Assembly (NCBI GenBank): GCA_001938485.1
Contig: MQRK01248900.1
Location: 79,055 to 143,054 of the forward strand
Source of the DNA: Girardia tigrina
Taxonomy: Eukaryota
Direction of reading: 5' to 3'
DNA length: 64,000 nt
The position numbers and the translations under genes were made by a program. The notes beneath the pieces are model-generated. The model ran no database searches. It was not told the origin of the DNA and saw nothing but the letters and a program-made list of their open reading frames with translations. This document shows positions 82 to 61,000 of this stretch, one piece after another. The first letter of the stretch is position 1. Each line of letters starts with the position of its first letter.

Positions 82-265
82 TTGACCCGTTTCATATCGA
101 ACAACCTAATATATACATGTACGGTATTAAATGAATTGCTAAAGATATTACTGACTTTAACTATTAGTGTTGCATCAGTTGAAAGATGCTTTTCTTCCTT
201 GCGTCAACTAAAAACATATTTAAGAAATACAATGTGTGAAGAAAAGTTAACAGAATTAGCTTTGC

Positions 266-311
<46 letters not shown>

Positions 312-806
312 AATATAAATGTTAATATTTTTAATGTTATTGAACGTTTTGCAAAGGTGTAAAATCGTAAATTAAATATAATTGTGATTCCGCTATATTG
401 TTTGTATTTTAAATAAACTGTTATTGTGATTTTTTTAATTTTGTTACACTTGTATATAATTTTGTAAAATCTTTATTTAATAGCTAATTTGTTAGAATCA
501 TTGTAATATTTCTGTATCAAGAAGCCTATAGTAATATCTGAATTATTTATAACGTCTCTCATAATCTCTTATAAATTACAAAACAACTAAGCATTTGTCT
601 TTATAAAATATTTTAAAATAAAATTTAAAAAATATAAAGTAATAGTATTATTTTAAGTAGAATGTGTTTTTATTTGAACATAGAGTTTAGAAAACGTAAT
701 AACAACTACATGTATATCATAGTATAATTATGCTTTTTTTCTAATTTTCTATTTTTTTGTTTAATTCGGAATCACCCCCTTTAATCATAGTCCAGATCAG
801 TCCCTG
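82..806 (+). mobile_element. hAT transposon 3' remnant (dimerization domain and right end)
   Basis: TISVASVERCFSSLRQLKTYLRNTMCEEKLTELALLHI is the hAT C-terminal motif, interrupted by (AT)n. Terminus-like ...agatcagtccctg ends at 806. Confidence 0.75.
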
Positions 807-1551: not shown

Positions 1552-1589
<38 letters not shown>

Positions 1590-1624
1590 AAATATAATTT
1601 GATTAAAGCTTTTTTTATATAATT

Positions 1625-1666
1625 ATTGGACATGTTTCGATGTTTACATACATCATCATCAGCAAT
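1625..1666 (-). ncRNA. Minimal type-I hammerhead ribozyme (antisense twin of 1752-1793)
   Basis: Exact reverse complement of the + strand motif. Confidence 0.85.
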
Positions 1667-1751
1667 TTTAATACAATTGTATTAAATAAAATTTTTTAAA
1701 TAAAATTGTATTATTCAAACAATTCAATATTCATATACTAAACATCCAAAA

Positions 1752-1793
1752 ATTGCTGATGATGATGTATGTAAACATCGAAACATGTCCAAT
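1752..1793 (+). ncRNA. Minimal type-I hammerhead ribozyme
   Basis: attg-CTGATGA-t-gatg(tatgtaaa)catc-GAAA-catgTC-caat. Intact core, 4-bp stem II, palindromic ACATGT stem III, stem I attg/caat. Predicted cleavage after GUC at 1789. Confidence 0.85.
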
Positions 1794-2144
1794 AATTATA
1801 TAAAAAAGCTTTAATCAAATTATATTTTCGAAATACTAAACTTGCGTTCAGACTCTATATATATATATATATAATGCTTGATATAATACAAATATAAATA
1901 TTAATAATATAAATATTAATAATTAACTTTTAATTATCTACTGTGGACATTACAATTACCTTGGAATAATATTAACGAAATTCATCTGTGAATGTTCAAA
2001 TAAATAATAATAATATTATTAATATTATAATACATTTATAATGAATAGGTAAAGAAAAATTAATATCTCTAACATAAAAACAAATTTTCTTGTTATTCTT
2101 ATAAAGTGTTGAAATATCTTGGAAACTGATTAAATAATTGCTAG

Positions 2145-2346
2145 GGCGCAGGAATCCAGATGATGAAGTTATTTCGCTTGGTGAGACTGATTCGATTATT
2201 GCAGAAGATAGACCGTTATGCTGAGTATAGCAGCGTCCTGCTAGCCCTTTTGATGTCCGCATTTGCTCTGTGCGCCCACTGGCTGGCGTGCGTGTGGTAT
2301 GTCATAGGAAAGGAAGAACTGTCGCATAATTCTACTAAAAATATAA
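2145..2346 (+). CDS. Elk: KCNH Elk/Kv12-type voltage-gated K+ channel, internal exon (S4, S4-S5 linker, S5)
   Basis: Acceptor ctAG|GGC at 2143-2144. Translates [55 protein letters not shown]. Donor A|GTAAG at 2347, phase 1, matches the next exon. Confidence 0.93.
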
Positions 2347-2592
2347 GTAAGCATCCTCTTAGTTTAATGTAATATTATGATTATGATTATTATTAGTAGT
2401 GTATTATGACTAATATTATTATATTAATATTACAAATAATGTTATTTATATTAATTTTTAAAATGTTCCTGTAAATGAAATTTGCGATAATAATTTTATC
2501 TCCTTAAATAATTCAATACAAACATACAAAATATTGATAATAAAATGAACTTTTGTCAGAAATATAGGATCAGAAATCTGTTGTTATATATA

Positions 2593-3755
2593 TAGGGATT
2601 CCAAACGTAATCAGTTTTTAAAATTCTGTAATTTCGGAATTACGGAATAATTCTGTAATTCGAAAAACCTTCCAATCTCTTTGTAAAATAAAAAAAATTT
2701 GCTGCTTTAGAATTTCTTTTTGAAAAAAAATAAAAAAACATACATTCTTAGAAACTCAATATTTATTACCATATAAGTCAAATTCAGAAATGTAAAGAAA
2801 TATGCATTTTAAATAGAATTTTAGAAAAAAAGAATAAAGCAACGCATTTATGGTTTTTTTTTTGAAGTAAGCCCGAAGAAATGAAAGTGCATTAATTATT
2901 ATATCGCTCAACCGAGAGCGAAGTTTTTTAACAATATTCCCGGCAACAGAAAATATCCGCTCGCATTCTACACTTGTAGGCCTAATAGAAAAAGGGCTTT
3001 TGTCATTTAAAAGATCCAATCGTTTCATTTCGTATTTAAATAATACTAATTTTCGTTGTAAAAGTCTTTCTGTTTTTTGAAGTCGGTTAGCAGGTGGGGT
3101 TGTACTCATGGTTGCATTAATAGCTCACTGAAGTTTTTTTCCCCTTGTTCCAGTTCAATGTTACATTCTGCATCCAACGAAGTATTTTTATGATTAAGAT
3201 CATCAATAGCCGTTATCAAAATATTTCTTTCCGTAATCTTTTTAATCAAAGAAAAAAATTCTTTCTTTAATGAAGCTTTTGTCGGCTCTCAAAAATTATG
3301 TATAAACCATATATGGTATATCATTGATGCAAATATTGCAAAACGTTACTCAAAATGGTTCGTCGTTTCTCTATTTGGACAATAACAGCATTCTGAATAT
3401 TCCTGTTTAATTGTGATGAATCCTTTTCTAAAGTATCGAGCAAAAACTCTATTGTTGTATCAGCAGAGAGTAGATTACAATCGCATCGGCATAGAGTTTC
3501 AACACTGACAATAAATGATAGTGTGAAAATTTGATCAAACTAGTAAATGAAAAAAAAACGTTTTGCGATTATCCACAAATGTTTAAACTGTATTAAATAG
3601 AAATGTTTTGGTTTTTTTTCCACCATGCTTCTAGCTTATTTTATGTAATTCCATAAATTACGGAATTTCTTTAAAAATTACGTAAAAAAATAATAGCATA
3701 AAAACCTATCCAAATTACGGAATTCCGTTATTCCGAAATTACGATTAAAATCCCT

Positions 3756-3814: not shown

Positions 3815-3864
3815 NNNNNNNNNNNNNNNNNNNNNNNNNNNNNNNNNNNNNNNNNNNNNNNNNN

Positions 3865-3903: not shown

Positions 3904-5360
3904 AATAAAACACACCATTTTAAGAATTTTTTATCATACAACAAAAACATGTTTCGCTATTACGACATTATCACTTGTGAAATACTTTCGGATTACAAGT
4001 CGTTTTTAGGCTTATATACTATTACGCGATATTTTTCAAATATTTAAAAATTTTAATGTGATTGGATAATTTCCTTAAGCATGGTTTTAAATGCTTTTTT
4101 TAATAATGTCTCAGTGACTATCCTCTCATGATTTGTCTCAAAACCTTTCTTGAAGACTTTAAATTAAGTTTCATATTTTACTTTATTTCTATTTTCAATA
4201 TTTCTTCAAAGTTTGGAGAAAGAATTTAATTGTTTTGAAGGAAACATACCTTTATTTTACACTAGATATGCTAAAGATATCTTCTTGATTTTTGAAAATA
4301 AAAGCCATATAGATGATTTATTACAATTTATGAATTAACTTTATCCAAACATGAGATTTGCCTGTGAAAGTGAATCAGCAGACAAGATTTCATTTTTGAA
4401 TGTAATAATTGAAAGAAAACCGATTGACTATGAAACTGAAGTATTTCAAAAGTGTACGGACACGGGTTTATACAATAATCCTATGAGTTTCTGTGATCCC
4501 AAGTACAATAAAAATATGGTGAAGGGATTAATTCACAGAATATGGAATTTATTATTGACTCTTTGTCGTGTGAAAGAGGTTATGCCATTGTTGATCTTAA
4601 ACGTAGGTTAGAAAATAATAGGTAGCATAAAAATTATTTAAATAATTTGATAAAATCACAATTGATTAAATTTAGGAAAATCCAACTATAAAAATGATAG
4701 CAGTAATGTAATAAAAACAATAAATTTTAAATTACCATTTTCTGAAGAAGCATGGGATTTGAGGAAAAGTACAATTAAAAAGGTTCCCTTGGGTTTTAAT
4801 TTGGGGGTGATCTTCATAAGTAATAAACTGTCCAAATATTTCTCTAGTAAATCAAAAACTCCATCGGTTGTTCAGGCTAATCTAGTATATCTGTTTATAT
4901 GTCACGAGTGTGAATCCGTGTACATTAGAGAAACAATCATCATCTCCGCACTGGAAAAGCTGAACAAACCCTATTGAGTAGGATTATTCTCGATTACATG
5001 AAAAAATGCAAAACTAAAGATAAAGTTAACTATGAAACTGAATCTACAGTCATGAAGAAAGATTTCGACATTTTTTGAAGAAAGATTTTGATGCTCACTG
5101 AGGCATGATTAATAAAGCCTTTAAAACCATACTTAAATGACCAAAGGGAATAATCTAATCATATTAAAAATTTTTAATATTTTAAAAAATATTGTGTAAG
5201 AGTCAATGTGTCATGTAAACGACTTGTAATCCGAAAGTATTTCACAACTGATAATACCGCAGTGGCGAAACATATTTTGTTTTATAAAAAATTATTAAAA
5301 TGGCGTGTTTTTTACTTATTTTTTTATAAATAAATTGCCATTAAATTTAAATTTTAAAAA
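3904..5360 (+). mobile_element. 5'-truncated Penelope-like retroelement with inverted pseudo-LTRs
   Basis: RT C-terminal remnant (ESESADKISFLNVII...QKCTDTGLY) and GIY-YIG remnant (NLVYLFICHECESVYIRET). Inverted repeats at about 3904-4006 and 5215-5315, each with a degenerate hammerhead. Confidence 0.85.
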
Positions 5361-7511: not shown

Positions 7512-9060
7512 TACAGTATAAATAATAATAACAAAATAATATTATAATTAAAATTAACAGCCAATTAAAATGTTTGAAACTGTTTATTAATTTCGACGTA
7601 TTAATCGTCATCTTCAGAACAACTAATTTTTTACGTTACTTATATACTGTCTGTAGTGATTATGTAATCAATCATTTAAAACCATTAATAAAATTGTCGA
7701 GAGTGCATTTTGAACGTTAATTTTAGGATGAAAAGATCTTGTATATAATGCGTCACATGTCCTTTTCTCCCAATAATTCTTAAATTGAGTGCACAGAATT
7801 TTAAAGTTATGGATATTTATGTCCCCTTTAAAATGTTTACTATGTCCACCAATATTACTTCCACTTTCCTTACGACTTTGTTCATGTATTCTATTACAGA
7901 GATGATGTGAAGTCTATTCAATGTATGTGGCATTACACTCATTACTTGTATATTGGTAAATGAGATCCGAACTAATGTAAACGGTGTTGAAGATTTATTG
8001 CTAAACATATCTTCAATTTTTTGGATACAGGAAATTATTTTTAAATTTACAGTCCTATCTACTTCTTTTACAATATAAATTTTAAATGTTTCGAAACCTT
8101 CTAAATAAGGTACAATTAAAACATATCTAAATTTTAAACTGTTTTTATTAGTGTTCTAAGAATAATCTTGATCTCGAACATCTATAAGTTTATTCTTATT
8201 ATTTTTATCAATTAATTTATCAATAGTTTCTTTTGTTTGTTTGTCAACTAATGATTTTGAAAATCCATTATGATATATTAATTTTGTTAATTTATTAAGA
8301 CTTTCATCACATCTCTTAAACGTGGATGAAAGGGCTAAAACGATAAATAAGGCCTTTGATCATATTTCTATGATATTTAAATTCACAGAAATATTAAAAA
8401 TATTAAAAAATATATTTGGGCTTGTATATAAACCCGTATCAGTTTTCTTTCATTAAATTTCAGTCTCATAAAAAAAATTTTCCCTCAATTAACAAATCCA
8501 GAAATGATAATTTTATTGTCATTCTTGTTACGATTTTGGTGAGCTCGTAAATTTTTTAATTTTAAAAACGGAACGCTTAAAACATTGTAAGATTTAAAAA
8601 TAAAAAAAGATTTAAAAACATCGTTCTAATTGGTTTTTTAAGCAAATCCTTTTCTCTTAAGATTTGTAGCAATTTTTAACGCAAAATTTGTTAAGTTAGT
8701 TTCGTTAACTGGTTTGTTAGATTCTCTCAATCTTCTATAAATCTCAAAAACGTTTTCATCAATTTCTTTATAAATGTCTAATTTATGTAGAATTTCTTGA
8801 ATATTTCTTCTTATTGTCCGTGATCTTGAGAAACATCAACATGGGAAAAAGAATATTTTCTACTATATTATTTATTAAATTTGTACCATTTTTAATTTTT
8901 TGAAAATGAGTTGAATTCCGAAGATTTTATCTCTTTCACTTTTTGAGCATAAATAATTTTCCATATCTTTTTTATTCTAGATATTGTTCCTTTGCTAGTA
9001 AAAAAATTCTTCTGTCAATTATCGTTCTGTTTTCCTTTTTTTAGAATTTTGCTACTTCGA
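7512..9060 (-). mobile_element. Decayed Penelope-like retroelement
   Basis: Minus-strand LSFLDLL...DTGLYT (RT) and CNATYIE.TSHHLCNRIHE (GIY-YIG) remnants, with a terminal repeat containing a hammerhead. Boundaries are approximate. Confidence 0.75.
7581..7621 (-). ncRNA. Minimal type-I hammerhead ribozyme
   Basis: Minus strand reads tgtt-CTGAAGA-t-gacg(attaata)cgtc-GAAA-ttaaTA-aaca. Intact core, palindromic ATTAAT stem III, AUA cleavage triplet. Confidence 0.8.
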
Positions 9061-12700: not shown

Positions 12701-13433
12701 TTAAATTTTTAATTTATTTAAACTTGTTAATTGTCTTAACATTACATCTTAAATATTTTTTTTAATTTTATAGAATAATCTTTTATAACTTTAATTAATT
12801 TTTAAACAATATTACGTCTTTAATATTTTATGATTTAATGATATTTTTGATACATTATAATTAATTTTTTAAAGTAATTTTAAATTCTAAGTAATTTTTG
12901 GTTTTTGACAAATCTTTAATATTTTACATTCAAACTATTAAATAAATTTTTTGGAGAATTTTAAAATTTAATACATTCACTCACCATTTACTGTATAATG
13001 TGGATTAAAAATGGTTTAAAACGGATTTTTATTTGAAAAATTGATGGGATACATGAAAATGTTTTTCAAAAAACCAATAGTTTATATAGTGTATTTATTA
13101 ATGTTTTTCATTGAAAATATATATGAGGAAAAACGTCGTAGCCATTTTGCCCAACTTCAAGTTCTCACTAAATGCTACAACTAAAATTCAATATGCTGTA
13201 ATCCAGTGAACGTTAAAAATACGATCCTAGAAACACTTGTGAAAACTAGTATAGATTGAAGTAGAGAGACATTACAAGAATGAGGACTGTTTATCCGAAG
13301 AAGCGATGACAACTCTAAAGTCAAAATCAAAAACAATTTCTCCATCTTATTAATAACTTTTATCATGCCTTTTTATCCACTTTCATTTATCTTTAAAGTT
13401 TTAATAGAGATTGTTGTATTTATTTAAATTTAG

Positions 13434-13628
13434 ATTGGCTTCATGATTTAGCGGAAAAGATGGAAAGTCCTTATTCAAGCAATTTTAGTGGTGGGCCATC
13501 CAATATCTCGATTTACGTCAGCTCGCTCTATTTTACTTGCAGCAGTTTGACGAGCGTTGGGTTCGGAAATGTCTCTCCAAATACAAATTCCGAAAAGATT
13601 TTTTCCATTTGTACAATGCTGATCGGAG
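13434..13628 (+). CDS. Elk: KCNH Elk-type channel exon (turret, pore helix, GFGN filter, start of S6)
   Basis: tttAG|AT acceptor completes AAT (Asn). Translates [13 protein letters not shown]...GGPS...[34 protein letters not shown]. Donor G|GTCAAT, phase 1. Confidence 0.95.
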
Positions 13629-13938
13629 GTCAATATTTTTGTAATTATTATTTGCAATATATTTAAAATGTAAAAACACTTTAACTAGCACTACTAAATT
13701 TACTGAAGCATTTTGTTTGAAAATTTGATTGTAGTTATAAATATATTTTTTTAATTTTTTAGTAACTAAAAATAAAAATTATTAATATATAATTTTTATT
13801 AAATAATGAATATTTTGCGTTTATGAAGAGTTTCAAAGACTCAAGTTTTAAAATCAACAAGCAGACACTCTTCATATGAAGGTATTGGAAAGGGCGTATT
13901 ACTGAATCCATAAACTGGAATCCATAATTGACGGTCAT

Positions 13939-22512: not shown

Positions 22513-23776
22513 TTAGGGTGAACCAAAAGTCTTTTTCTTCAATTGTTTCTTATTACCAAATAAGGATATTATATATACATGTGTTATATCTTTTTAAACC
22601 TCTTGAACTGCTCTATCACAATATATATTAAAACTTATAATTAGTCGTTAGTATAATTTTTATTGTCTTTTAGAGAAATCATGGAAAATTTTGAAATTCG
22701 TGTTCTTTTACGACATTACTGGAAACAGGGCTTAAACGCAACTGCAGAAACAAAGAAGATATGCGAAGTTGAAGGCGATAATGTTGTCTCAAATTGTACT
22801 GCACAAAATTGGTTCAAAAGGTTCAACGAAGGCAACATTGACCTCGGAGACAATGCACGTTCAGGCCGACCTATCACCGTAGATTTCGGAGCAATTCGTG
22901 AAGTCGTCGAGGCAAATCCGTCAATAAGTACTCGCAGATTGTCGGCCGAACTCGATATTTCTCAAACATTCATTGTACGACACCTTCACGCTCTTGGTAA
23001 GGTCAATTGACGATGTCGAGAAGTGCCTCATGAATTGACACAAATTCAAGCCGAAAAGCGTTTCGAAACTTGTCAAAGATTACTTGAAAATCCGCGCGAT
23101 GACCGTTTCATCCGTCGAATTGTAACTTGCGATGAAAATTGGGTTTACTTCAGTAATCCACACCAACAAAATCAATGGTTGGACCCCGGACAAATGGCGA
23201 AACCGGTAGCGAAACGAGATCGGTTCTCAAGGAAGGCACTTTAGTGTGTTTGGTGGAATTCCGAAGGCGTGATTCACTTCGAGCTGGTTCCAAATGGTCG
23301 TACCATCGACGCTGACCTTTACTGCGTCAAACTTGATCGAATGTATGCGGCACTTGGCGAGAAATACCCCGCTTTGATCAATCGAAAGCGAGTTCTTCTA
23401 CAACAGGACAATGCAAAACCGCACACCGTCAAACAAACAAAGGAAAAAATCAAAAATCTCGACGCCTTTGAACTTCTTCCACACCTAGCTTATAGTCCGG
23501 ATCTTGCGCCATCCGACTATCACCTTTTCCGCTCTATGGCACACTTTCTTCGTGATCGCAGCTTCAATAATCTGGCCGAGGTCGAAAAAGGTGTCACCAG
23601 CTCTTCGCTTCTAAGAACAAGGATTGGTACCGCAGCGGGATCGCACAACTTGCCCATAGATGGGTTCAAGCTATAGATTCAAACGGCCTTTACTTTGAAA
23701 CTTAAATTTTTTTTATTTGTAAAATTATGTTTAAATTTTTAATAAAAAATACGAAAAGACTTTTGGTTCACACTAA
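22513..23776 (+). mobile_element. Full-length mariner (DD34D) with pseudogenized transposase
   Basis: TIRs ttagggtgaaccaaaagtc/gacttttggttcacactaa with TA TSD. Motifs VPHELT, IVTCDE, QQDNA, YSPDLAPSDYHLF. Two in-frame stops and a late frameshift. Confidence 0.95.
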
Positions 23777-24248: not shown

Positions 24249-26340
24249 CAGTTTCAACTCGGATAATATCATGTTTATGGAAAATTTGAAAATCATGATA
24301 TTAACCGAGAAGTGACAATAACCGAGTTTATTTTTTTAAAAAATATAAATAAAAAACTATTTAATTATTCACTCCAATATACTAGTTTGTCTTTTTTTAC
24401 TTTTTTTTCAATATTATTTTTTCCACAATCTGCTCCAAACTATTATAAGAGTTCCAGTCATCCGCATTATTTTCATTTAAATAACTTTTCAGATTTTTCA
24501 ACACCTCGATCGCCTGATTTCCAGTAATTTTTACATTCGAACTCTCTTCATGAATATCGACTTCTCGTTCATCAACATGCTGCAAATCAATAATGCCTAG
24601 TTTCTTTTTATCGAATCAACAATTTCTTCATCATCCAATATTTCAAAACACCCGACATTTTGGTCAACATCAACATAACTTTCAAAATTAAAATCCAACC
24701 CTTCGTGTGATATTTTTAAATCCTTTTCTGCAGCCTTCATATCACCATTCAAACTAAAGCCTACCTTTTTAAAACAATTAATAATCGTAGTGGGGTGATA
24801 TCGTAGTGACCAAGAATCCTTGATTAAATTCAAAGCCTCAAAAATATTTATTTGCTGGGTTAATGTTAATGCACTTACATTTTCTTTGTCCACCTCAATC
24901 ATAACTAACAATTTTCTTATCCTACGATAATGATGTTTAAGAGCTCGGATAATTCCTTGGTCGCATGCTTGGATGTTAGATGTGTCATTTTTGGCAGAAA
25001 AACCAATTTGATATTCTCAAGTTTAATTTTTGGATAAGCCGGGCAATTATCAACAACCAGCGCAATTTTACGATTTTTAAGCACGATTTCTCGATTCCAC
25101 TTACAAAGCTACTCTCCAAAAATAACTGACATCATCTAAGCATTCTTATTACAAGTATATACGACAGGTATTTTCTTAATATCATTAAAACAGCGGGAAT
25201 TTTTATACTTCCCAATGACAAACAATGGTCTCTTTTCTCCGGCCATATTTACACGGACAAGTACGGTAAATCTTTCTTTAGGCACTTTGCCACCGTTCAT
25301 TTCATTTGATTTTAAATCATGTGAACCATTGGGCTATTATATAAAGCGGTTTCGTTCGCATTATAAATATCTACTGCTTTATATTTTTTCAATAAATTTT
25401 GACATATTGTTTCCAATCAAAATTCAGCGCCAAATTTATATGCATCAAGTTTTGTACCAAAATATTTTTATAGACAATTTCATGCCTTTTCTTCCATTTA
25501 TCAATAAAACCGGTCTTAACATCAAAATTTTTTAATCCCATTTTTTTGCAAATTGTTCGGCTTTTAGTTTCAAGGTTTCACCACTTATTGGTAAGTTATT
25601 CGCACTTGCATTTGAAAACCAAGCAAATAGTGCGGCGTCTACATCATCAATCTTACTTCCTCTTTGTCTCATTCTTGAAGCATTACCGTTTTTACTGTCA
25701 TTTAAAAGTTTTGAACGTGACTTGTGTATTTTACTTACGGTTGATGCATCGACTTTAAAAAGCTTTGCGACACTTGCAAATGTTGTTCCGGGACTTTCAT
25801 CACATGCAGCAAGTATTTCAAGTTTCTTTTAATAGTTAAGTCAATTCTTTTAAGTTTGATTTCCATTGAGTAAGTATTTTTGCTCAATTATGGCTCAATC
25901 TCCTTTTGTTTATTTGAGGGAAAGTCTGATTCAATTAAAATCCAATTGATATAATGAAATTTAAATTATAATTACTATTTAACTTTTATCAAATATTTAA
26001 TTAATTTTTAAAATGAATATCATATTATTATATAAAATATAAAAATAAAATATAAAAATTGCTAATGGAAACGGTTTCGTGACCGTTACCCAAAAGCGGG
26101 GTATTGGTAAAAGTTTTCAATTAGCAAAAACACGTTATCAGATTGCTCTTCACTTAATCGTGTCTCGCTCATGCGCAAAGACTGAATAAAAATCTCAATC
26201 TTATCAAAAAATCATTAACCGAAGAATGATATAAACCGAGGTGATATTAAACGAGTATAAAGTATAAAATATAATAATAATTATTTTAAAAACAAAATAA
26301 CCGTGATATTAAAAGGGATTATATTAACCAACTTCTACTG
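24249..26340 (-). mobile_element. pogo/Tigger-like DNA transposon (CENP-B HTH + DDE), decayed
   Basis: TA-CAGT...ACTG-TA ends and subterminal gatattaaccgag repeats. Minus-strand LVVDNCPAYP, DQGIIRALKHHYR and TIINCFKKVGF remnants. Confidence 0.85.
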
Positions 26341-34356: not shown

Positions 34357-35719
34357 GTTTCTGATATAATGCTGCTAACATGTTCTGCTATCCCATAGAC
34401 AAATAGGGCAATTGTATTTGGAGTAGCCACGCTGTATCGTCCATTGGAGAGACATATCGCCATCTCAAAAAGCTGATAAGTGAGCATTCACAATCTAGTC
34501 GATCAAGTAAGTTTTCTGTTTCATAAAAGACCTTTGATTCACATTATGAGAGACAGTTCAGGGAATCCTTAATGATAAGACATTTTAACTCACTAATTAA
34601 TATTCAACATTTACAAAATAAGGAAGTCTCAATTCCTAAAGTCTTTAAAAATTTTTTTTAATGACCATTAATATTACATAAATTCTGGGGGAAAATTACA
34701 TATTTTAAATATTCAATTTTTTGATAATGGAACAGGAAACTTCAAAACATGTTCAATAATCAATTTCTTAAAAAAACGTTAACTTTAAAATATCAAATTA
34801 GCTTTCACAAAATTCTATATTATATATAAAATTATTTATTTTGTTTGTATAATTTCAACGATTTATTTTGTTAAACTGTTTCAACAAATCTGATTTCGTT
34901 GAGCATTATTATTTTTAATATTATTTTTTTTAAAAAATATTTTATAATAAAAATTTTTTTAATGCAATCATTGTATCAATCCATTAACAATTAGAAATAT
35001 TATTTTTATTGCTTATAACAAAAGCGTATCAAAATCATTCCCATTATAAATATAATATAAATTTATTTATATTAAATAATTAATTAGCGTTTCAGTGCTA
35101 ATTCGGATGTAGCAAAATTTATTAATAAAATTTAATTATCATGGTTTATTTACGATAAAGAGGATAAAATTCTTCCCATATTGAAGGCTGAATAAATAAT
35201 TTTTAAATGAAACAATATCTCTCGCGGTTAAACAGTTGATATATTCATTAAATCATGTCAAACGGGTTAAATTAGAAATTATTTCTATTTCGAAACAGAT
35301 TTTAGATGTGAAAATTCAATTAATTAAACAGTTTGTTTTTCGATTTTTATTTTAAAAATAATCACAACAAAAATATAAATTGATTAATTTTGTATTGTTT
35401 AATGTTCGATTTTTTTGTAATATTACCAGAGGAGCTCAAATACACTTTTAAATCTCTTAATCTAAGAAATGTTAACCTAATTTTACAAATAAACTAATAC
35501 ACGAACCGTCAAAAAGATCATTAACCTTTCCTTGAATTAATCATTTAAAATATTATATTTACTAATTAGTTGAAGTAATAGTGACCCTTATTAAACTTTT
35601 AACAGATAGGGAATAAGCCCTAGGATATATACAAGAGTGTGAGAAGGTAGTTCTGGCCAGTAACACTTTCTTAACAATAAATCCTATCCACTCCTGAAGT
35701 AAATACTAGGAATAATCCC

Positions 35720-41461: not shown

Positions 41462-42630
41462 TAGGTTTAAAAGGATAAATATCTTTTGTTGGGCCTCCCA
41501 TCTCTTTTGAATGGTATTGAGCCACTAGGCTCTTTAGAGGGTCCACCCAAACTAAAGAGTGCTAGCTGGCCCCCGATAGGCCTCCTATGAGGACGGAGTG
41601 CTGCAGTCTCCGAAATTTCTTGGGCTTCCCTGTTGCAAACGACCAATCATGGACGTGGTACCATGATTGAGCATCCCTCTGGCTATATCCGTGGACTTGG
41701 TACAGCCGCGAAAGGGACATTTGAACTTTCCCTTCGCATTTGGATCTGCGATCCTAAAAGACAAATGTGTATCTTCGGGATGAGTTGTTTGCTCCACAAC
41801 CGTTGAAATAGTCGGGGTGACTGTTGCTGACTGAAAGTCGGTCATTTGGATGAGTGTTGGTTCTGTGTCTCTGTCTGGATTGTCGCTTCTTCTGTTGGAT
41901 TGCGCTGATGATTCTGTGGGATGTTCATTGATATTCTCCTTCACCTCTATTCGATGATCTTTACGCAGATGCCTCGTAAACCATCCTTTCGTTTTGTAAC
42001 CTTTGCTGCATTTGGTACACTTAATCGGTTTTTCATCTTGTGGGAGCTGAAGCGGAATGCTTACTGTAGATTTCGTGTGATTCCGCTTGAGATGTCTATT
42101 CAGCTCCTTTTGTTCGGCAAACTCCTTAAAGAAACCTTCTATCGTACATTGAAGGAGTTTATCTCTCTCACTGAGTAATTTCGGCAGATCGGTTCTTGTT
42201 CTGTTCTACTTTCCTTCTATTATTAACCAGTTGATGTATTGCTCTCTTTCTATAGTGGGGTCTCTGTGGACAATGTGGTGTATGAAGTCTTCATACGTTG
42301 CACTATCCTCGAAGAGCCACTGTATATCCCCCTGCGAGGCATTCGGAGAGAGCTTGCTTCTTTCTCCAACTGATCTTCTTTCCCATTGACATTGTTGCTT
42401 TCCACACACAACTCACAATGTTTGGTGTATCAGAGGCATCCAACCTGCTATGATAGGCAAGTCTTCTGCTTGCAATGATATCCATGGGAAGCGGGAGTCC
42501 AATGTCGATAGTATCCATCTGTATCCTCTCAGTCTTCTGCACTTTCAGGGTTTTTGCGAGTGCACAAATTGTGAAAGGCAGCCAGCTTCTTGATTGTTTT
42601 GCTACCTGTTCACCAACTCTTACAACTATA
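41462..42630 (-). mobile_element. Deleted RLE-type non-LTR retrotransposon fragment
   Basis: GC-richer block with a zinc-finger-like FKCPFRGCTKS...MLNH motif fused to a probable 3' end. Confidence 0.45.
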
Positions 42631-45600
42631 GTATACTATAAATATATTTTGTTAAGTTAATTACACCAATTCAACTTGTATTTCAAATAATAACAATTAT
42701 ATTTAAAATTCTTAAATTGTATTTTAAATAATAACAATTGTATTTTAAATTTGTAAATTGTATTTCAAAAGTGTAGACATGTAATACAAATGAAACGAAT
42801 AAATAGTTCAAGTAATTCTAGATAATGAAATGTTTTTTTTTTAATTGAAATATTGATAATAAATAAAACGTTAAACTCTTTTTGTTAATTTGGTTTAAAA
42901 AATTTTGCTGATTTTATATTTATTTTACGTTGAATTTTATCAAATAATATAATACTAATCTATAAAATTAATGGAAAAAATTTCAATTTCTAAAATCTCG
43001 TTTTTAATAAATAGCTTATCAGTATTTATAATTCAGTATTTTTATTTCAAAAGAAAACGAAAGTTCCTCAAGAAAAATTGTTTAAATAAATGTTATTTGT
43101 GTTATTAATAAAAATTTTGTGTTAACGAATGATAATCTTGATCAAGAACGCAACATATATATGACTAAATGAATTGTAAAATGCTAAAATTTACCAAATT
43201 AAGCTTGTATTCAACATTTCTAATTCCCTGTCGTCATTCAGAATAGGACTTTTAAAAATTATTAAGAATTATTCAATTGTTTTATGTGAACAATTTGTTG
43301 ATTTTTTGAATAATTATTTTTTTGCTTTAATGATATTTTGAATGTACTTTTAAATTGAGAATGTTAAAATAGTAATTCGAAAAAACCTTCTGGTGTAGGA
43401 GGTGTACGGTCTTGAAATTCGAGGGTCTATGCCCTCTATGTTGCTAATTAGGAAAATGAAAATAAACTAACTATTTACTTATTTTTTTATTAATTCTTGA
43501 ATATTTGATAAAATAATTATGTGTATGCTTATGTCCTAATTATTTCTTATATTCATAATTATACGTAATTTGTAAATGAATATGGCACTAGTTAATCTAC
43601 TGCAAACGAAACATGAATTAATTCCTTCTGAGTCTACAGATAAAATAAATGCTGCAGCCGAGAAGATGTGATGTTTGAGGGACATTTTTGACACTGAGTT
43701 GCGAATTGCAAGAAAGAAAACTTTTACTTGGAAGAAAAATAGTAATGTAAAATCTCTCCCTGACATTAAAATAAAAAAGATTTTTTTATTTAAATTCAAA
43801 AATTATTTGCTATTTATCAGGGTGAACAAAAAGATTAAATTTGGATGTATTGAGCACTAAATGTTATACTAAATTCATCAAGATATTAAACTAAAAGTAT
43901 CCGCTTGATGAATTCGGAAAAAGAAATAGTTTCCAAAATTCAAAGAGAGTAGCAAAAATCTAGAAAATATCTCAAAAGGCTAAATGCAATAGAATTTAGG
44001 AACAAATTCTATTTAATATTCAATTGAAATGATGAGACCATTAGATTTCGGGGAATCGTAAGAAGGGAGAAAATTGGCATTCGTCCTCAGTGATCCACCC
44101 CGGGGTTCACCGTTACCATGGAAACGGTTGCGATTGCCATAGTAATAGTCGTGGTAACAATAGCAACCGTCGCGATCACCTTGGAAACGCTTCTGGTTGG
44201 TTCCCGGGTCCCTAGCAACGGTTCCGGTTCACTTGATAACGATTCCGATTGCTTCTCGGTACTTTGGTAACGGTTCCCATCACCTAACAAACCAATCAAA
44301 TCACTCGAAAATCTTGACAATCGTCACCGTGACCCTAAAAATCATCTCAACAGCCAATAAAATCATGTTGACAGACATCGGAAACACCTTAGAAACCATC
44401 ATTGTTACCTTAAAACCATGAAAATCACCTGAAAAATCATCGAAAACATATAAAAAAATTACACAGAAAAGTGCACTGTGCTCATCAACACTTGCACATG
44501 TGCTAATCAATACTTCACATGTGCAAGTGTGCAAATTAAAAACCCTCAAATTTACCATATCAGCAATCAAAATCAGTAAAAAAAAGTGCACAGATTGACA
44601 ATGGTGAATTAGCTTCCGAACTTCTTGCCGCACGCAATCTTCCTCGATCTGTCTTGCCTATTGATATTTGTCTTGTTTGATTTCCTAAAGTCCAACAAAT
44701 ACTTTAAATTGCTTATTAGTTTCAAAATGAATGAAATTCTTCACAAACCTGTAGCCTTCTAATACCCTTGACACCGTTACACGGCTAATTCAAATTTTAT
44801 CAGAAAGTTAAGTGGAAATCCATACAGACAAAATATTTCTAAAGTGTATATCATCAGTTAGTACCTCTCAAATTGTTGTTCTTTTCTATTTCTAAATTAT
44901 CTTTAAGTTCTCTAATATTCACATTGCAATTGTCTGCTACCATTCCATTTTCTGCTTTAACTGCCTGGTCTTCTACCTCCAATTTCTCATAATTAAGTTG
45001 GATTTTCTGAAATTCATTGTACCAACGACGCATATTGAAATGCTCTGTATAACCTAACATTAAAATTTGAAATTATCTGTAAGAATATTAATGAATTTTA
45101 ACTTGTCGCACAGTTGATATACTGGTTCGTCCTTGTCAATAATTATTCAGATTTATTCATGTACCAAACGAGTATATTCATGCAGATTTGTATCATGATG
45201 TTATATACATTGTCTCACTACATATGTTTACTCGGTACGATTAGAAAATGCCATTCTCATGGAAGCTATTCTCAAAAATTTCTTCACACACAAAATATTT
45301 AAGGTGATTATAATTAAAAATCATTTGAGTGTGAGTTTGATAGTGACTTTGACAGGATGTTGCAAAAATCAAATAAATCAAGTATCGTGTAGCTAAGAAA
45401 ACTAGACTTTGAAGTCCTTAATATTTTTCTCTTTGTCTAGACATTGGCTCATCAGATTATCATCAGTCGTTATCAATAAATTGCCAACAAAATAAGTGAC
45501 TTAAGTTTATTTTTCGGTAAAAGTCAAGCGATTTTCGATTGATGTTATCCCTTTGCGGATAGATAATGACTGAGAGTAGTGAACAATGTTGGAGGATATG

Positions 45601-45684: not shown

Positions 45685-46935
45685 TTAGGTTGGTCGAAAA
45701 ATAATGGCGGTTTTGGTACACAAACTTCAAAGACGTGCAAATTCACAGAAACAAAAGTTTATTAATCAAAGTATGAACCGTTGGCATCAATACATTTTTG
45801 NNNNNNNNNNNNNNNNNNNNNNNNNNNNNNNNNNNNNNNNNNNNNNNNNNNNNNNNNNNNNNNNNNNNNNNNNNNNNNNNNNNNNNNNNNNNNNNNNNNN
45901 NNNNNNNNNNNNNNNNNNGAAAAAGTAGAAGTCCGTTGGCGAGAGGTCTGGTGAATATGGTGGATGAAGCAGGGTTTCATAGCCCAACTCATTAAGCTTT
46001 TGAAGAGTCACTTTTGAAATATGAAGTCTAGCGTTATTATGAATAAGGATGGGACTTTTTCGATTGACCAATCCCGGACAAAGGGTTTTCAATTTTTTAT
46101 GCATTTCATCAATTTCATGACAGTACCTCTTCGCTGTGATTGTTTCACCTGGATTCAAGAAACNNNNNNNNNNNNNNNNNNNNNNNNNNNNNNNNNNNNN
46201 NNNNNNNNNNNNNNNNNNNNNNNNNNNNNNNNNNNNNNNNNNNNNNNNNNNNNNNNNNNNNNNNNNNNNNNNNNNNNNNNNNNNNNNNNNNNNNNNNNNN
46301 NNNNNNNNNNNNNNNNNNNNNTGGATCGTTTTTATTGCGGAGATGATTGGCAGAACAAATTTCATAGCGTCGGTTCTTTTGATTTTCATTCAAATCATGT
46401 GGAACCCATTTATCAAGTTTCTTGATTTTTCCAAGTTGTTGTAAATGATCCAGGACTATTGAATGACTAATACCCAACCCATCTGCAAGTTCTCTGATTG
46501 TTGTACGGGGATATGTTTCCACCATTGTCCTCAAATTGTCGTTGTTCACAGCAACTGAACGACCACGACCTTCTTCATCTTCAAGGTTTTCATCTCCACC
46601 AGAAAATTTTCGGAACCATCGTTCCATTGTGCGCTCAGAAGCTGTTCCCTTGCCAAACGCTTTATTGATATTGCGAGCCGTTTCTGCTGCTTTACGACCC
46701 AGTTTAAATTCGTACAAGAAAATTGCTCGAATTTTAATTTTTTCCATTATTAATTTAGCACCGTAAATATTCAAAAAAATAACAGCAATATGTTAATAAT
46801 GGCTATAGGAATATACAACTAGGCATAAGATTTCAAATAATATCTAACACTAATGCATTTAAACTTATATACATATCAAAGTAGATAAACAAAGTATAAA
46901 GCTCAAAAACCGCCATTATTTTTCCACCAACCTAA
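45685..46935 (-). mobile_element. Full-length mariner, cecropia/Hsmar1-like
   Basis: About 30-bp TIRs with TA TSD. KIRAIFLYEFKLGRKAAETARNIN, WVPHDL, YSPDLSPTDFYF. No stops in the readable parts; two N gaps. Confidence 0.95.
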
Positions 46936-58059: not shown

Positions 58060-61000
58060 TGAATGACAGGTTCACTCTTAAAATTTTGAAACAATTAATT
58101 TTTATAAAGAATTTCTAAAATAAGGAAATATTTTAAATCAAAAATTTTCTAAACAATTATAATTAAAAAATATATCTTAATTAATTTAAAAAAGTTATCT
58201 TCGGAAATAATCAAATTTTAATTGTAGAGTAAAAACTTAAAATGATATTAATTGGGTAATAATGGATTTTTATATAATTGATTTAAAAGAAATATATAAA
58301 GACAAGGATAATTATGTTTGTACTAATTTTAAAAGTTATTCTAAAAAATAAAATTTTGGTGTTAATGAGTCTTAATCTCGATCAAGAACCCAATATGTCG
58401 ACCATCATCAGCAGCTTCGAACAACAAATTTCGGGGCTCATACCAGACAAATTTAGGCAACAAGATAATGTAGAAACATTCATTTCGGCTTGCGCAAGAT
58501 ACTTCAAAGTGGTTAGAGTATCGGAAAGTATGCAAGAGATATTGGTAATTGGTTTACTGTCACACGAACTCGTACCAATATACGTACCAATATACAATAG
58601 CAACAAGCACTAAGGAAGAACATTATAACGTAGTCAAAGAAGTATTTGGAAGAATAAAGAAGACAGGATTAAGAATCAAACCATCGAAATGTAAAATATT
58701 ACGACAAGAAGTAAAATTTTTAGGATACGTTATAAATGATAAAGGGATACAGACAGACCCAGAAAAAATAGCATCAATAGAGAATTTTCAAAGACCCTCA
58801 TGTATAAAAAATTTTAAGAAGTTTTCTAGGTATATACAATTACTACAGAAGTTTTATAAATGGATATGCGAAGAAAGCTAAAATATTGGAAGGAATATGT
58901 GGCTCGAATAAAGAAAAATTAATTTGGACAAATGCATGTGAAATAGCTTTTCAGGACATGAAGAAAGCATTGATAACGGCACCAATATTGAGTTTTCCGA
59001 ATTTCAAGAAACAGTTTATTCTAGATACAGACGCTAGTTTTAACAGCATAGGTGAATCAGACAAGGAGCAAGTAATAGCATATGGATCACATTCAATGTC
59101 ACCACACGAAAAAGTATATTGCATAACAAGAAAAGAACTTTTGGCAATTTTTTACTTCTGCCAACATTTCAATCATTACTTGTACGGGAAAAAATTGAAA
59201 CTGAGAACGGACCATAAAGCTATAACGTTTATGTTTCATACAAAGAAACCATTAACAGCTCAATTACAAACGTGGATGAATTACTTGAGTAGTTTAGATA
59301 TAGAAATAGAATACAGGAACGGAGAACTACACAACAACGTGGATATGCTATCAAGACGAAATTGCGACACATGTACCCAATGTCAAATGGAACATGAAGA
59401 AGCTAAAAAGTGTAAGATTAAAACTATATTGTTATCAGTGACTACAAGGAGCCAAGCGAGAGCAGGTCAAAAAGAATGGATACCAAAAGAAAAACGGAAC
59501 GATTTAATCATACAGACACATAAATTATTGTGTCATGCAGGAGCAGAAAAAGTATATGAATATCTAAGGGACAAGTTTGATATGGAGGAAGAAAAGAAAA
59601 CAGTAAAGGAGGTAGTCGGAACATGTATAGAGTGCCAACAAACAAAGACAATGACCACGAAGACAATGGAAGAAAACGTTAAAATAACAGCGTCAGAAAT
59701 ATTTGAAAATGTTTATATAGATATATGTGGACCGTGGCATGAGACAGTAAGAAGAGAAAGATACATTCTCGGAATGATAGACCACTTTAGCAAGTACATC
59801 AGCTTGACGGCAATCAAGAGACAGGACGAAGAAACAATTGTACAAACAATATTACTGTTGGGAACGTTCATAAAATATAAAATTTTTGAATCTTATCAAA
59901 TTATTAAATAAACAATTACATTCCGTAAAATATTGTTATAAATATGTTAAAATAATATTTTCAGAAGTTTAATTTAAAAAAATTAATTTAAGTAAAAAAT
60001 AAAATAAATTTTACGGTAGGGTTATTAAAAGATTTATGTAAAGATTTATTATAAAGTAAAAAAAGTTAATTTCAAATTTGATGAAAATATTTAATTGAAA
60101 TAAAATAAAAAGTAATTTAAGTTTGATATTTTATTTGCGAAATAAAAGTAAACTAAACCATTTTGGTAACTTTTAAATCAAAGTAAATTAAAAATGTGGT
60201 TATAATTTTTTTTGGAAAATGTAATTATAATTTTTGGAAATTAAAATTGGAATTAAAAAATAATTGTAAATCCATTAAATCGACTTAAATAAAAAATGCG
60301 ATTTTAATTTTTTTTTGGAAAATGTAATTGAGAAACAGGAAAATTTAAATGTACCATAAAATTGAAAAATTAATAAAAGACGCAACAAAATCTTTGTGAC
60401 AAAATTTTAATTCACTATATTTTTTTATTAAGGAAATATAGAATTTTAATTTGTAAAAAAAATATACTAACCATATTTTTATTTATATNNNNNNNNNNNN
60501 NNNNNNNNNNNNNNNNNNNNNNNNNNNNNNNNNNNNNNTAAATCGACTTAAATAAAAAATGCGATTTTAATTTTTTTTTGGAAAATGTAATTGAGAAACA
60601 GGAAAATTTAAATGTACCATAAAATTGAAAAATTAATAAAAGACGCAACAAAATCTTTGTGACAAAATTTTAATTCACTATANNNNNNNNNNNNNNNNNN
60701 NNNNNNNNNNNNNNNNNNNNNNNNNNNNNNNNNNNNNNNNNNNNNNNNNNNNNNNNNNNNNNNNNNNNTGGTTGTGTAAAAAAGAAAGTACAAAAGTTCC
60801 TCAAAAATATTTGTTTAAAAAATTCAAATTGTTATAGAAATAAATTTTTGTGTTCATGATAATGTCTTTTGATCAAGAACCCAATAATTACAAAAATGGA
60901 TGTTAAAATTTGGTGCACCAAAGGAGATACATGTTGATTGTGGTAAAAGTTTCGAGGCAAAAAAAGTTAGAGAAATGTTGGAGAGTAAAGGCTTTAAAAT

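What the first reader, a model, noticed from the sequence alone, without database searches (positions are those of the whole stretch)
1586..1855. Young 270-bp fold-back element made only of two opposed, intact hammerhead ribozymes
Seen: near-perfect 83-bp inverted arms, each with a complete minimal type-I hammerhead (CUGAUGA, stem II gatg/catc, GAAA, palindromic ACAUGU, GUC site). There is no coding sequence, one arm has a short tail, and the element sits in (AT)n. Known: PLE pseudo-LTRs carry minimal hammerheads whose palindromic stem III favours dimeric cleavage, and PLEs often insert with an inverted truncated repeat. Inference: this is either an extreme PLE truncation or a non-autonomous ribozyme-MITE family. 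Transcription in either direction gives one ribozyme plus its own antisense strand, which could keep it from cutting the K+ channel pre-mRNA.
Basis: partly seen in the sequence, partly recalled or inferred. Interest (0 to 1): 0.85.

Follow-up and report, generated by a model that had tools for sequence, protein, structure and literature searches.

The report
Aborted head-to-head Penelope retroelement insertion
The 270-bp fold-back is real, but it is an ordinary dead product of a Penelope-like retrotransposon: two very short, opposed 3'-end fragments, each carrying the element's small hammerhead ribozyme, dropped into a (TA)n repeat in a potassium-channel intron.

Summary
Arms 1586-1669 (-) and 1749-1831 (+) match at 83 of 83 aligned bases, with one 1-nt length difference. 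Each arm carries a complete minimal type-I hammerhead, and (TA)n lies on both sides. A 24-nt tail (1832-1855) sits at one end only.

The element is not a ribozyme-MITE. Window 1705-1855, tail included, is about 97% identical to the sequence downstream of an intact RT/GIY-YIG ORF of a Penelope-like element (PLE) family found in metagenome and Logan contigs (L010, L012-L018).

Other copies of that family show:
- different 5' truncation points;
- two further, different inversion junctions (L010, L018);
- both kinds of 3' end, with and without tail, abutting (TA)n.

An unrelated PLE (L011) shows the same design: 294-nt inverted arms, a one-sided 22-nt tail and a clear target duplication.

The hammerhead has every published PLE hallmark, and stems I and II covary. 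Rfam's hammerhead models do not score it.

As RNA the locus folds into an 83-bp hairpin (-123.5 kcal/mol), so the ribozyme is 99.9% paired to its antisense arm. Published single copies of such ribozymes show no detectable cleavage anyway.

This is a known kind of element and of low interest.

The parts
1556..1585 (.). (TA)15, left half of the target microsatellite
   Evidence: Read directly. The family's other 3' ends also abut (TA)n (L013, L016).
1586..1669 (-). Left, inverted PLE 3'-end fragment. It is 84 nt and tail-less. Its 3' end is at 1586 and its 5' truncation at 1669.
   Evidence: 97.7% identical to L010 1800-1887 in reverse orientation. Its outer end ...TTTTCGA lies within 0-4 nt of the tail-less 3' end of the independent copy L013.
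1629..1662 (-). Hammerhead core of the left copy, from C3 at 1662 to C17 at 1629
1669..1684 (.). Inversion junction: a perfect 16-nt palindrome between the two 5'-truncated ends. About 1670-1684 matches the family only at chance level.
   Evidence: Sequence, repeat I10, identity bins.
1685..1831 (+). Right PLE 3'-end fragment. Its start is uncertain within 1685-1705; homology is unambiguous from 1705.
   Evidence: Window 1705-1855 against L010 1756-1909: 147 identities and 3 mismatches. Identity is 60-70% in 1685-1704 and at chance further left. See also alignments A1 and A2.
1756..1789 (+). Hammerhead core of the right copy, in the same sense as the host gene. Predicted cleavage is between 1789 and 1790.
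1832..1855 (+). PLE 'tail': the optional extension found at one end only. In tandem copies it continues into the next unit.
   Evidence: The same tail follows TTTTCGA in L010, L012, L014, L016 and L018. It is absent from L013 and from the left arm.
1856..1873 (.). (TA)9, right half of the target microsatellite
   Evidence: Read directly.
2160..2372 (+). Neighbour: an open stretch holding the S4-S5 exon of a KCNH-type K+ channel. The element lies about 300 bp upstream of it, presumably in the preceding intron.
   Evidence: Pfam Ion_trans E 4.8e-5, profile positions 97-151. The pore exon with SVGFGN lies at 13397-13663 on the same strand.

Best explanation
The element is one dead-on-arrival insertion of a canonical Penelope-like retrotransposon (RT plus C-terminal GIY-YIG endonuclease) into a (TA)n microsatellite in an intron of a KCNH-type K+ channel gene.

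What the sequences show:
- Two cDNA fragments of the element's 3' region lie head to head, with their 3' ends outward.
- The right copy (about 1685/1705-1855) starts at the distal 3' terminus and so carries the 24-nt tail.
- The left copy (1586-1669, reverse strand) starts at the proximal, tail-less terminus.
- Both are extremely 5'-truncated, at 84 nt and about 130-150 nt plus the tail. They meet at a short palindromic junction.

What is inferred:
- The two DNA ends of one endonuclease break each primed reverse transcription on PLE RNA. Each used one of the two internal start sites described for PLEs. Both syntheses aborted early, and the ends were then joined.
- The hammerheads are passengers. 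They lie 42 nt (tail-less end) or 66 nt (tailed end) upstream of the RT start sites, so any short 3' fragment includes one.
- Both copies span the cleavage site, so the template RNA was uncleaved there.
- The ribozymes are most likely inert at this locus. Helix III (2 bp with a 2-nt loop) cannot close in a single molecule, and no second copy in the same orientation is nearby to form the dimer. In a transcript of either strand the antisense arm is made first and pairs with the ribozyme in an 83-bp stem.
For: Family parent:
- The metagenome scan found L010. It has an intact 536-aa ORF with RVT_1 (E 2e-11) and a GIY-YIG match in the C-terminal 140 aa (E 3e-4).
- Downstream of that ORF lies sequence about 97% identical to window 1705-1855, hammerhead and tail included.
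- Cluster mates gave L012-L018. L012 holds an intact 836-aa ORF preceded by an upstream partial tandem copy with hammerhead and tail, that is, a pseudo-LTR.

Independent truncations:
- Against L012, the direct copies begin at about 1574 (L010), 1494 (L013), 1669 (L014), 1750 (L017) and 2304 (L018).
- L010 and L018 carry inverted partners truncated at about 2959 and about 1526.

Two kinds of 3' end:
- With tail: L010, L014, and L016 followed by (TA)n.
- Without tail: L013, followed by (TA)n.
- The window has one of each.

Same architecture elsewhere:
- L011, an unrelated PLE-type hammerhead in a contig of 37% GC, has 294-nt arms 98% complementary, a 22-nt spacer, a 22-nt one-sided tail and the target duplication CACTTCAG(AATA).

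Hammerhead:
- 88.9% of cells are paired, against 21-47% when the partners are slid. Three pairs change on both sides, including G-C to U-A in stem II of L012, a locus found through its protein and not through the RNA pattern.

Folding:
- The full RNA folds at -123.5 kcal/mol, z = -23. The hammerhead is 99.94% paired to the left arm. The isolated monomer's best fold is not the hammerhead fold.

Literature:
- An inverted 5'-truncated copy, a 30-40 bp tail at one end and a (TA)n bias are described in PMC8557442.
- Dual min-hammerheads 100-700 bp apart on opposite strands were ascribed to truncated PLEs, and a single motif showed no detectable cleavage (PMC4209133).
- Reverse transcription starts at two internal sites, the tail is the stretch between them, and both DNA strands are cleaved and extended (PMC11167929).
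Against: - The host genome could not be searched, so the copy number of this exact fold-back is unknown.
- The family relatives come from metagenome and Logan contigs of unidentified organisms. Those organisms may be the same species as the window or a related one.
- Identity in 1685-1704 is only 60-70%, so the right copy's start and the nature of the 15-35 nt at the junction are unresolved.
- The target-site duplication is hidden in (TA)n, so a single insertion event is inferred by analogy with L011 and not shown.
- The window's tail is 24 nt, 3 nt shorter internally than in relatives and below the 30-40 bp given in the literature.
- The GIY-YIG match (21.4 bits) is just below Pfam's cut-off of 22.6.
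- No expression or cleavage data exist for this locus.
Confidence: 0.82

Rival explanations
1. A non-autonomous fold-back 'ribozyme-MITE' family: the 270-bp unit itself is the mobile entity and has been copied as such.
For: It is small, has no ORF and has near-perfect terminal inverted arms. The (TA)n flanks are compatible with a TA target. PLE-derived non-autonomous elements (animal retrozymes) do exist (PMC7229834 abstract).
Against: - The right arm is not terminal, because a 24-nt tail lies outside it.
- The arms end at the two natural PLE 3' termini seen in independent copies.
- Every other copy of the family seen here has a different truncation point or junction.
- There is no second copy in the 64-kb window.
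- The junction sequence is absent from the one further collection scanned, which holds prokaryotic genomes and is therefore a weak test.
Confidence: 0.05
2. A single truncated PLE copy inserted first. The inverted arm arose later at the DNA level, by replication template switching or hairpin formation at the cruciform-prone (TA)n.
For: A perfect 16-nt palindrome lies at the junction. (TA)n tracts are prone to such events (own knowledge).
Against: - The left arm ends exactly where tail-less copies of the family end (L013). A DNA-level copy of the right arm would be expected to include the tail or to stop at an arbitrary base.
- The same one-tail design recurs in L011, flanked by a target duplication around the whole fold-back.
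Confidence: 0.07
3. A host-recruited intronic RNA element, either a working ribozyme or a regulatory hairpin of the K+ channel pre-mRNA.
For: The right hammerhead is in the sense of the host gene, about 370 nt upstream of the S4-S5 exon. Intronic hammerheads are known in amniotes (own knowledge; Rfam families HH9 and HH10).
Against: The arms are 97.7-98.3% identical to copies of a PLE family that still has intact ORFs. That is the pattern of recent insertion, not of conservation. The ribozyme is sequestered in the hairpin, and no second copy in the same orientation is nearby for dimer formation.
Confidence: 0.03
4. An assembly or library artefact that produced a false palindrome.
For: Short inverted duplications can arise in library preparation. 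The assembly has gaps nearby, for example the N run 3815-3864.
Against: The structure is asymmetric: unequal copies, a one-sided tail and an off-centre junction. It matches PLE biology in detail, and independent assemblies show the same design (L011, L018).
Confidence: 0.03

Closest known systems
Hammerhead ribozymes of metazoan Penelope-like elements (min-HHRs and the variants with a small palindromic helix III; Cervera & de la Pena 2014, PMC4209133)
   Same: - Type-I topology and the CUGAUGA / GAAA / GUC boxes.
- An unpaired nucleotide between A9 and G10.1, and the G10.1-C11.1 pair.
- A short helix I (4 bp plus an interrupted extension) and a palindromic helix III that can pair only between two molecules.
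- Location in the pseudo-LTR.
- That paper already reports dual motifs 100-700 bp apart on opposite strands and ascribes them to truncated PLEs.
   Different: Nothing essential differs. Helix II is 5 bp, against 7-8 bp in the Schistosoma families. The start codon of the family's called ORF lies inside helix III; in the Anolis PAc element the ORF starts at stem II (PMC11167929).
Canonical PLE insertion architecture (pseudo-LTR, inverted 5'-truncated copy, one-sided 30-40 bp tail, microsatellite targets; PMC8557442, PMC11167929)
   Same: Head-to-head inverted 5'-truncated copies, a tail at one end only, a (TA)n target, and the two alternative 3' ends that correspond to two RT start sites.
   Different: The truncation is extreme: neither copy keeps any RT or EN coding sequence, so only the hammerhead-bearing terminus remains. 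The tail is 24 nt, not 30-40.
Animal non-LTR retrozymes (PMC7229834; bioRxiv 10.64898/2026.07.22.740005)
   Same: They are non-coding, derived from PLE pseudo-LTRs and carry type-I hammerheads with weak helix III.
   Different: Retrozymes are tandem direct repeats, in which two ribozymes of the same sense release a unit that can circularise. Here the two ribozymes are on opposite strands, so no transcript holds two sense copies.
MITEs and fold-back transposons
   Same: Small size, near-perfect inverted arms, no ORF, AT-rich target.
   Different: The arms are retroelement 3' ends, not transposase-binding termini. One arm is followed by a tail. The junctions differ among family copies.
L1 twin-priming inversions (own knowledge: Ostertag & Kazazian 2001)
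   Same: An inversion made during target-primed reverse transcription, when the second DNA end also primes on the RNA. Both segments are 5'-truncated.
   Different: In L1 the second priming is internal and gives two different segments of the element. Here both ends primed in the 3' region and gave duplicate segments.

Membership tests
Hammerhead ribozyme, PLE type (type I, weak palindromic helix III) | Catalytic boxes C3-U-G-A-N-G-A9, G12-A-A14 and an N-U-H cleavage triplet | tested here: met
   CUGAUGA, GAAA and GUC are present in both arms.
Hammerhead ribozyme, PLE type (type I, weak palindromic helix III) | [quoted passage not shown] | tested here: met
   U at 1763, then G1764 paired with C1779. 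Both are invariant in all 15 distinct relatives.
Hammerhead ribozyme, PLE type (type I, weak palindromic helix III) | Palindromic 15.2-16.2 and loop 3, allowing an intermolecular helix III | tested here: met
   ACAUGU at 1783-1788. The intramolecular version is impossible because the loop has 2 nt. The intermolecular duplex scores -6.0 kcal/mol.
Hammerhead ribozyme, PLE type (type I, weak palindromic helix III) | Helices I and II supported by covariation | tested here: met
   88.9% of cells paired, against 21-47% in slid controls. Three pairs change on both sides. Pair 2.1-1.1 is A-U in 6 sequences and G-C in 6. Including L001 adds C-G.
Hammerhead ribozyme, PLE type (type I, weak palindromic helix III) | Self-cleavage at the predicted site | not testable with these tools
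   No expression or biochemical data are available. The literature reports no detectable cleavage for single motifs of this kind.
Rfam Hammerhead_1 and the other Rfam hammerhead models | Score at or above the curated gathering threshold | tested here: not met
   No hammerhead match at gathering score over the window, nor at E<=10 over 1500-1950. Min-HHRs also needed relaxed descriptors to be found in the original work.
Penelope-like element (canonical, endonuclease-positive) | [quoted passage not shown] | tested here: inconclusive
   The window element itself has no such ORF. Its relatives do: RVT_1 at E 2e-11. The GIY-YIG match, E 3e-4 and 21.4 bits, is just under the 22.6 cut-off. Several homologues carry a precomputed PF01541 hit.
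Penelope-like element (canonical, endonuclease-positive) | A pseudo-LTR from partial tandem copies, with the hammerhead inside it | tested here: met
   In L012 the hammerhead (600-633) and tail precede the full-length ORF. L012 198-719 repeats the 3' region of the other copies.
Penelope-like element (canonical, endonuclease-positive) | Frequent 5' truncation, with an adjacent inverted 5'-truncated copy | tested here: met
   Seen in the window, L010, L018 and L011.
Penelope-like element (canonical, endonuclease-positive) | An optional tail at one end, and a microsatellite target | tested here: met
   The tail 1832-1855 is present on the right only. Copies with and without tail both abut (TA)n.
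MITE / fold-back DNA transposon | Inverted repeats form both termini and are flanked by a target duplication | tested here: not met
   The right arm ends 24 nt inside the element. The target duplication cannot be read in (TA)n.
MITE / fold-back DNA transposon | Many copies with the same internal structure | not testable with these tools
   The host genome is not available. There is one locus in the window, and the other family copies have different junctions.
Non-LTR retrozyme | Tandem direct repeats, each with a sense hammerhead | tested here: not met
   Only inverted copies are present, with no direct repeat of the ribozyme.

The most novel reading that the evidence does not exclude
The fold-back lies inside a transcribed intron and forms an 83-bp perfect RNA duplex. 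It could therefore act as a hairpin-RNA source of small RNAs against the still-intact PLE family. Its arms cover that family's ribozyme, the start of its ORF and the region where its reverse transcription begins. If so, abortive head-to-head insertions would double as a built-in brake on the element.
Probability: 0.08. Interest if true: 0.45.

Novelty: new member of a known kind. Interest (0 to 1): 0.17.

Why it matters
It matters little beyond annotation. The locus is a clean small example of three published PLE signatures in one place:
- an inverted 5'-truncated partner;
- a one-sided tail that fits two RT start sites;
- a (TA)n target.

It also shows that short retroelement scraps can look like purpose-built 'ribozyme elements', simply because the ribozyme sits next to the priming site. 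For genome scans the lesson is practical: opposed minimal hammerheads a few hundred bases apart should first be read as PLE debris, and Rfam's hammerhead models will miss them.

Tried and rejected
- Rfam cmscan gave no hammerhead hit, at gathering score or at E<=10. The weak sR1 and mir-297 matches are chance.
- An exact look-up of the neighbouring exon ORF, meant to fetch orthologous loci or empty sites, found nothing on record.
- The viral-contig scan for the ribozyme gave 0 hits.
- The genome-contig scan for the junction gave 0 hits. That collection is prokaryotic, so the result is uninformative.
- A text search for the sample and contig accessions, to name the organism, found no paper. The host therefore remains an unidentified AT-rich (about 27% GC) animal genome.
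- I considered reading the 9-mer shared by 1733 and 1833 as a sign of a 100-nt tandem unit. I rejected this once relatives showed that the tail simply continues the PLE unit.
- I considered that the left copy also extends into the spacer with a 35-nt deletion, on the basis of repeat I10. The support is only a few AT-rich bases, so I rejected it.
- MAFFT misplaced L001 in alignment A3. I left it out of the formal pair count (A4) and counted it by script instead.
- I built no covariance model and no consensus.

Full report
**1. The observation**

- Arms 1586-1669 and 1749-1831 are reverse complements, with 83 identities and no mismatch. One arm is 1 nt longer in a homopolymer run.
- (TA)15 (1556-1585) and (TA)9 (1856-1873) flank the element.
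- 24 nt (1832-1855) lie outside the right arm.
- The loose hammerhead pattern CTGATGA..GAAA..GTC occurs at 1756-1789 (+) and 1629-1662 (-). The expectation is 0.06 per window. The two hits are copies of one sequence, so this is one independent event.
- A third hit at 44827-44857 has none of the helices and looks like chance.
- No ORF of 45 aa or more overlaps the element.
- Rfam 15 does not recognise a hammerhead here, at gathering score or at E<=10.

**2. The ribozyme motif**

Read on the + strand, the right copy has:
- stem I AUUG/CAAU (1752-1755 with 1790-1793), followed by an AA/AA mismatch and two more A-U pairs;
- CUGAUGA, then an unpaired U;
- stem II GAUGU/ACAUC with a 6-nt loop;
- GAAA, the palindrome ACAUGU, and C17 at 1789.

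These are the features that Cervera and de la Pena (PMC4209133) list as hallmarks of PLE hammerheads and that were not built into their search. [quoted passage not shown]

A metagenome scan with a pattern that fixed only the core, stem II and helix III returned 11 contigs. In these contigs and in the family loci fetched later, the unspecified stem I covaries.
- The first two pairs are standard in 29 of 30 cells, against 19, 8 and 15 when the partner is slid.
- On a 12-sequence alignment, 88.9% of cells pair, against 21-47% in slid controls, and three pairs change on both sides.
- One of these is G-C to U-A in stem II of L012 and L018. Those loci were reached through their protein, not through the RNA pattern.

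The motif is therefore a genuine member of the PLE hammerhead class.

**3. Where it comes from**

One of the 11 contigs, L010 (33% GC), matches far beyond the ribozyme.
- It has an intact 536-aa ORF with a reverse-transcriptase domain and a GIY-YIG match in its last 140 aa. That match, E 3e-4, is just under Pfam's cut-off.
- Downstream of the ORF lies sequence colinear with window 1705-1855, at 147 identities and 3 mismatches. This stretch includes the 'tail'.

The 90% protein cluster of this ORF has 15 members. Seven were fetched with their contigs.
- L012 holds an intact 836-aa ORF. It is preceded by a partial upstream copy that ends in hammerhead plus tail. This is the pseudo-LTR arrangement of Penelope-like elements.
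- The copies are 97-99% identical to one another, so the family looks recently active.
- The called ORF of L012 begins at the ATG inside helix III. Its first roughly 26 codons stay in frame in L010, L014 and L016. The arms of the window element therefore overlap the first codons of the PLE ORF.
- In the right arm that short stretch carries one frameshift. Apart from these first codons the PLE ORF is absent from both copies because of the 5' truncation.

**4. Why it is not a MITE family**

That criterion is met, measured against L012.

| Copy | Direct copy begins at about | Inverted partner truncated at about |
|---|---|---|
| L010 | 1574 | 2959 |
| L013 | 1494 | none seen |
| L014 | 1669 | none seen |
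| L017 | 1750 | none seen |
| L018 | 2304 | 1526 |

The 3' ends come in two kinds.
- With tail: L010, L014, and L016 followed by (TA)n.
- Without tail: L013, where ...TTTTCGAAA is followed by (TA)n.

The window element has one end of each kind. Its left arm stops within 0-4 nt of the L013 terminus. A later DNA-level duplication of the right arm would not be expected to end there.

An unrelated PLE-type locus, L011 (37% GC), has the same design:
- 294-nt arms, 98% complementary;
- a 22-nt spacer;
- a 22-nt tail on the right only;
- a target duplication, CACTTCAG(AATA), around the whole structure.

That duplication shows that such fold-backs can insert as a single event.

**5. Mechanism**

Shown:
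- colinearity with the PLE 3' region;
- the two natural termini;
- variable junctions;
- the (TA)n context.

From the literature:
- PLE insertions often carry an inverted 5'-truncated copy and a 30-40 bp tail at one end, and favour microsatellites (PMC8557442).
- A purified PLE protein cleaves and extends both DNA strands and starts reverse transcription at two adjacent internal sites. The tail is the stretch between those sites (PMC11167929).

Inferred:
- Both ends of one break in the (TA)n tract primed on PLE RNA, one at each start site.
- Both syntheses stopped within about 85-150 nt.
- The ends were then joined, leaving the 16-nt palindrome at 1669-1684.

Both copies span the ribozyme's cut site, so the template was uncleaved there. 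This agrees with the report that unprocessed RNA is the main insertion substrate.

**6. Does the ribozyme do anything here?**

Probably not.
- Helix III cannot close within one molecule. With helices I and II only, the fold scores -3.2 kcal/mol, against -7.4 for a competing misfold.
- The published single motif showed no detectable cleavage.
- No second copy in the same orientation is nearby to form the dimer.
- The full 270-nt RNA folds into one long hairpin of -123.5 kcal/mol, z = -23, in which the ribozyme is 99.94% paired to the other arm.
- The copies are head to head, so in a transcript of either strand the antisense arm is made first.

**7. Context**

The host gene is a KCNH-type K+ channel on the + strand.
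- The S4-S5 exon lies within 2160-2372 (Ion_trans).
- The pore exon lies at 13397-13663.
- S1-S3 must be encoded upstream, so the element is taken to be intronic. This is an inference.

The window is TE-rich: hAT, mariner, Ty3/gypsy and several PLE remnants.

The organism could not be named.

**8. Verdict**

This is a new instance of a known kind. Opposed min-hammerheads 100-700 bp apart were already ascribed to truncated PLEs in 2014. Interest is low.

**Limits**
- There was no host-genome census.
- There were no expression data.
- The junction is unresolved over about 15-35 nt.

**Self-check**
- I wrote it before I knew that the arms overlap the start of the PLE ORF. This report gives that difference only as a count, and nothing was deleted.

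Noticed in passing
window 7580-7625 (-), with window 7985-8485 (-): A second, different PLE-type hammerhead lies about 370 nt downstream of a degenerate PLE ORF remnant that has 4 in-frame stops. It has CUGAAGA, an extra U, a 4-bp stem II (GACG/CGUC), GAAA, a palindromic AUUAAU helix III and a 6-bp stem I. It was read by eye only.
   Followed up: partly
window 34400-34830 (+): Another 5'-truncated PLE 3' end, from a related family. Its last 40 codons are 68% identical to the L010 ORF. The region homologous to the hammerhead has decayed and no longer fits the core boxes.
   Followed up: partly
window 4189-5144 (+) and 41490-41665 (-): Further PLE remnants. The first has matches in 2 reading frames with 8 stops. 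The second is a 176-nt piece 77.5% identical to L012 29-198.
   Followed up: no
L012 600-700, L010 1807-1909: The called 836-aa PLE ORF starts at the ATG inside helix III of the hammerhead and reads through the tail. The same frame stays open in L010, L014 and L016. Ribozyme, ORF start and RT start sites therefore overlap within about 70 nt.
   Followed up: partly
L011 5882-6533: In an unrelated contig, a complete fold-back of two opposed PLE 3' ends: 294-nt arms, a 22-nt spacer, a one-sided 22-nt tail and an 8-12 nt target duplication.
   Followed up: yes
L002, L005, L006, L008, L009, about 50 nt upstream of each hammerhead: A conserved stretch (..GTTTCGC..) looks antisense to the GAAAC half of the ribozyme. 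It could be a built-in alternative pairing or a trace of an inverted copy.
   Followed up: no
window 26037-26182 (-): A U4 spliceosomal snRNA gene, 89.4 bits with the full model matched.
   Followed up: no
window 82-318 (+), 2756-3109 (-), 23269-23676 (+), 45787-46774 (-), 58886-59911 (+): Other transposon debris: hAT dimerisation-domain pieces, mariner/Mos1 transposase pieces interrupted by N-masked runs, and a Ty3/gypsy RNase H-integrase piece.
   Followed up: no
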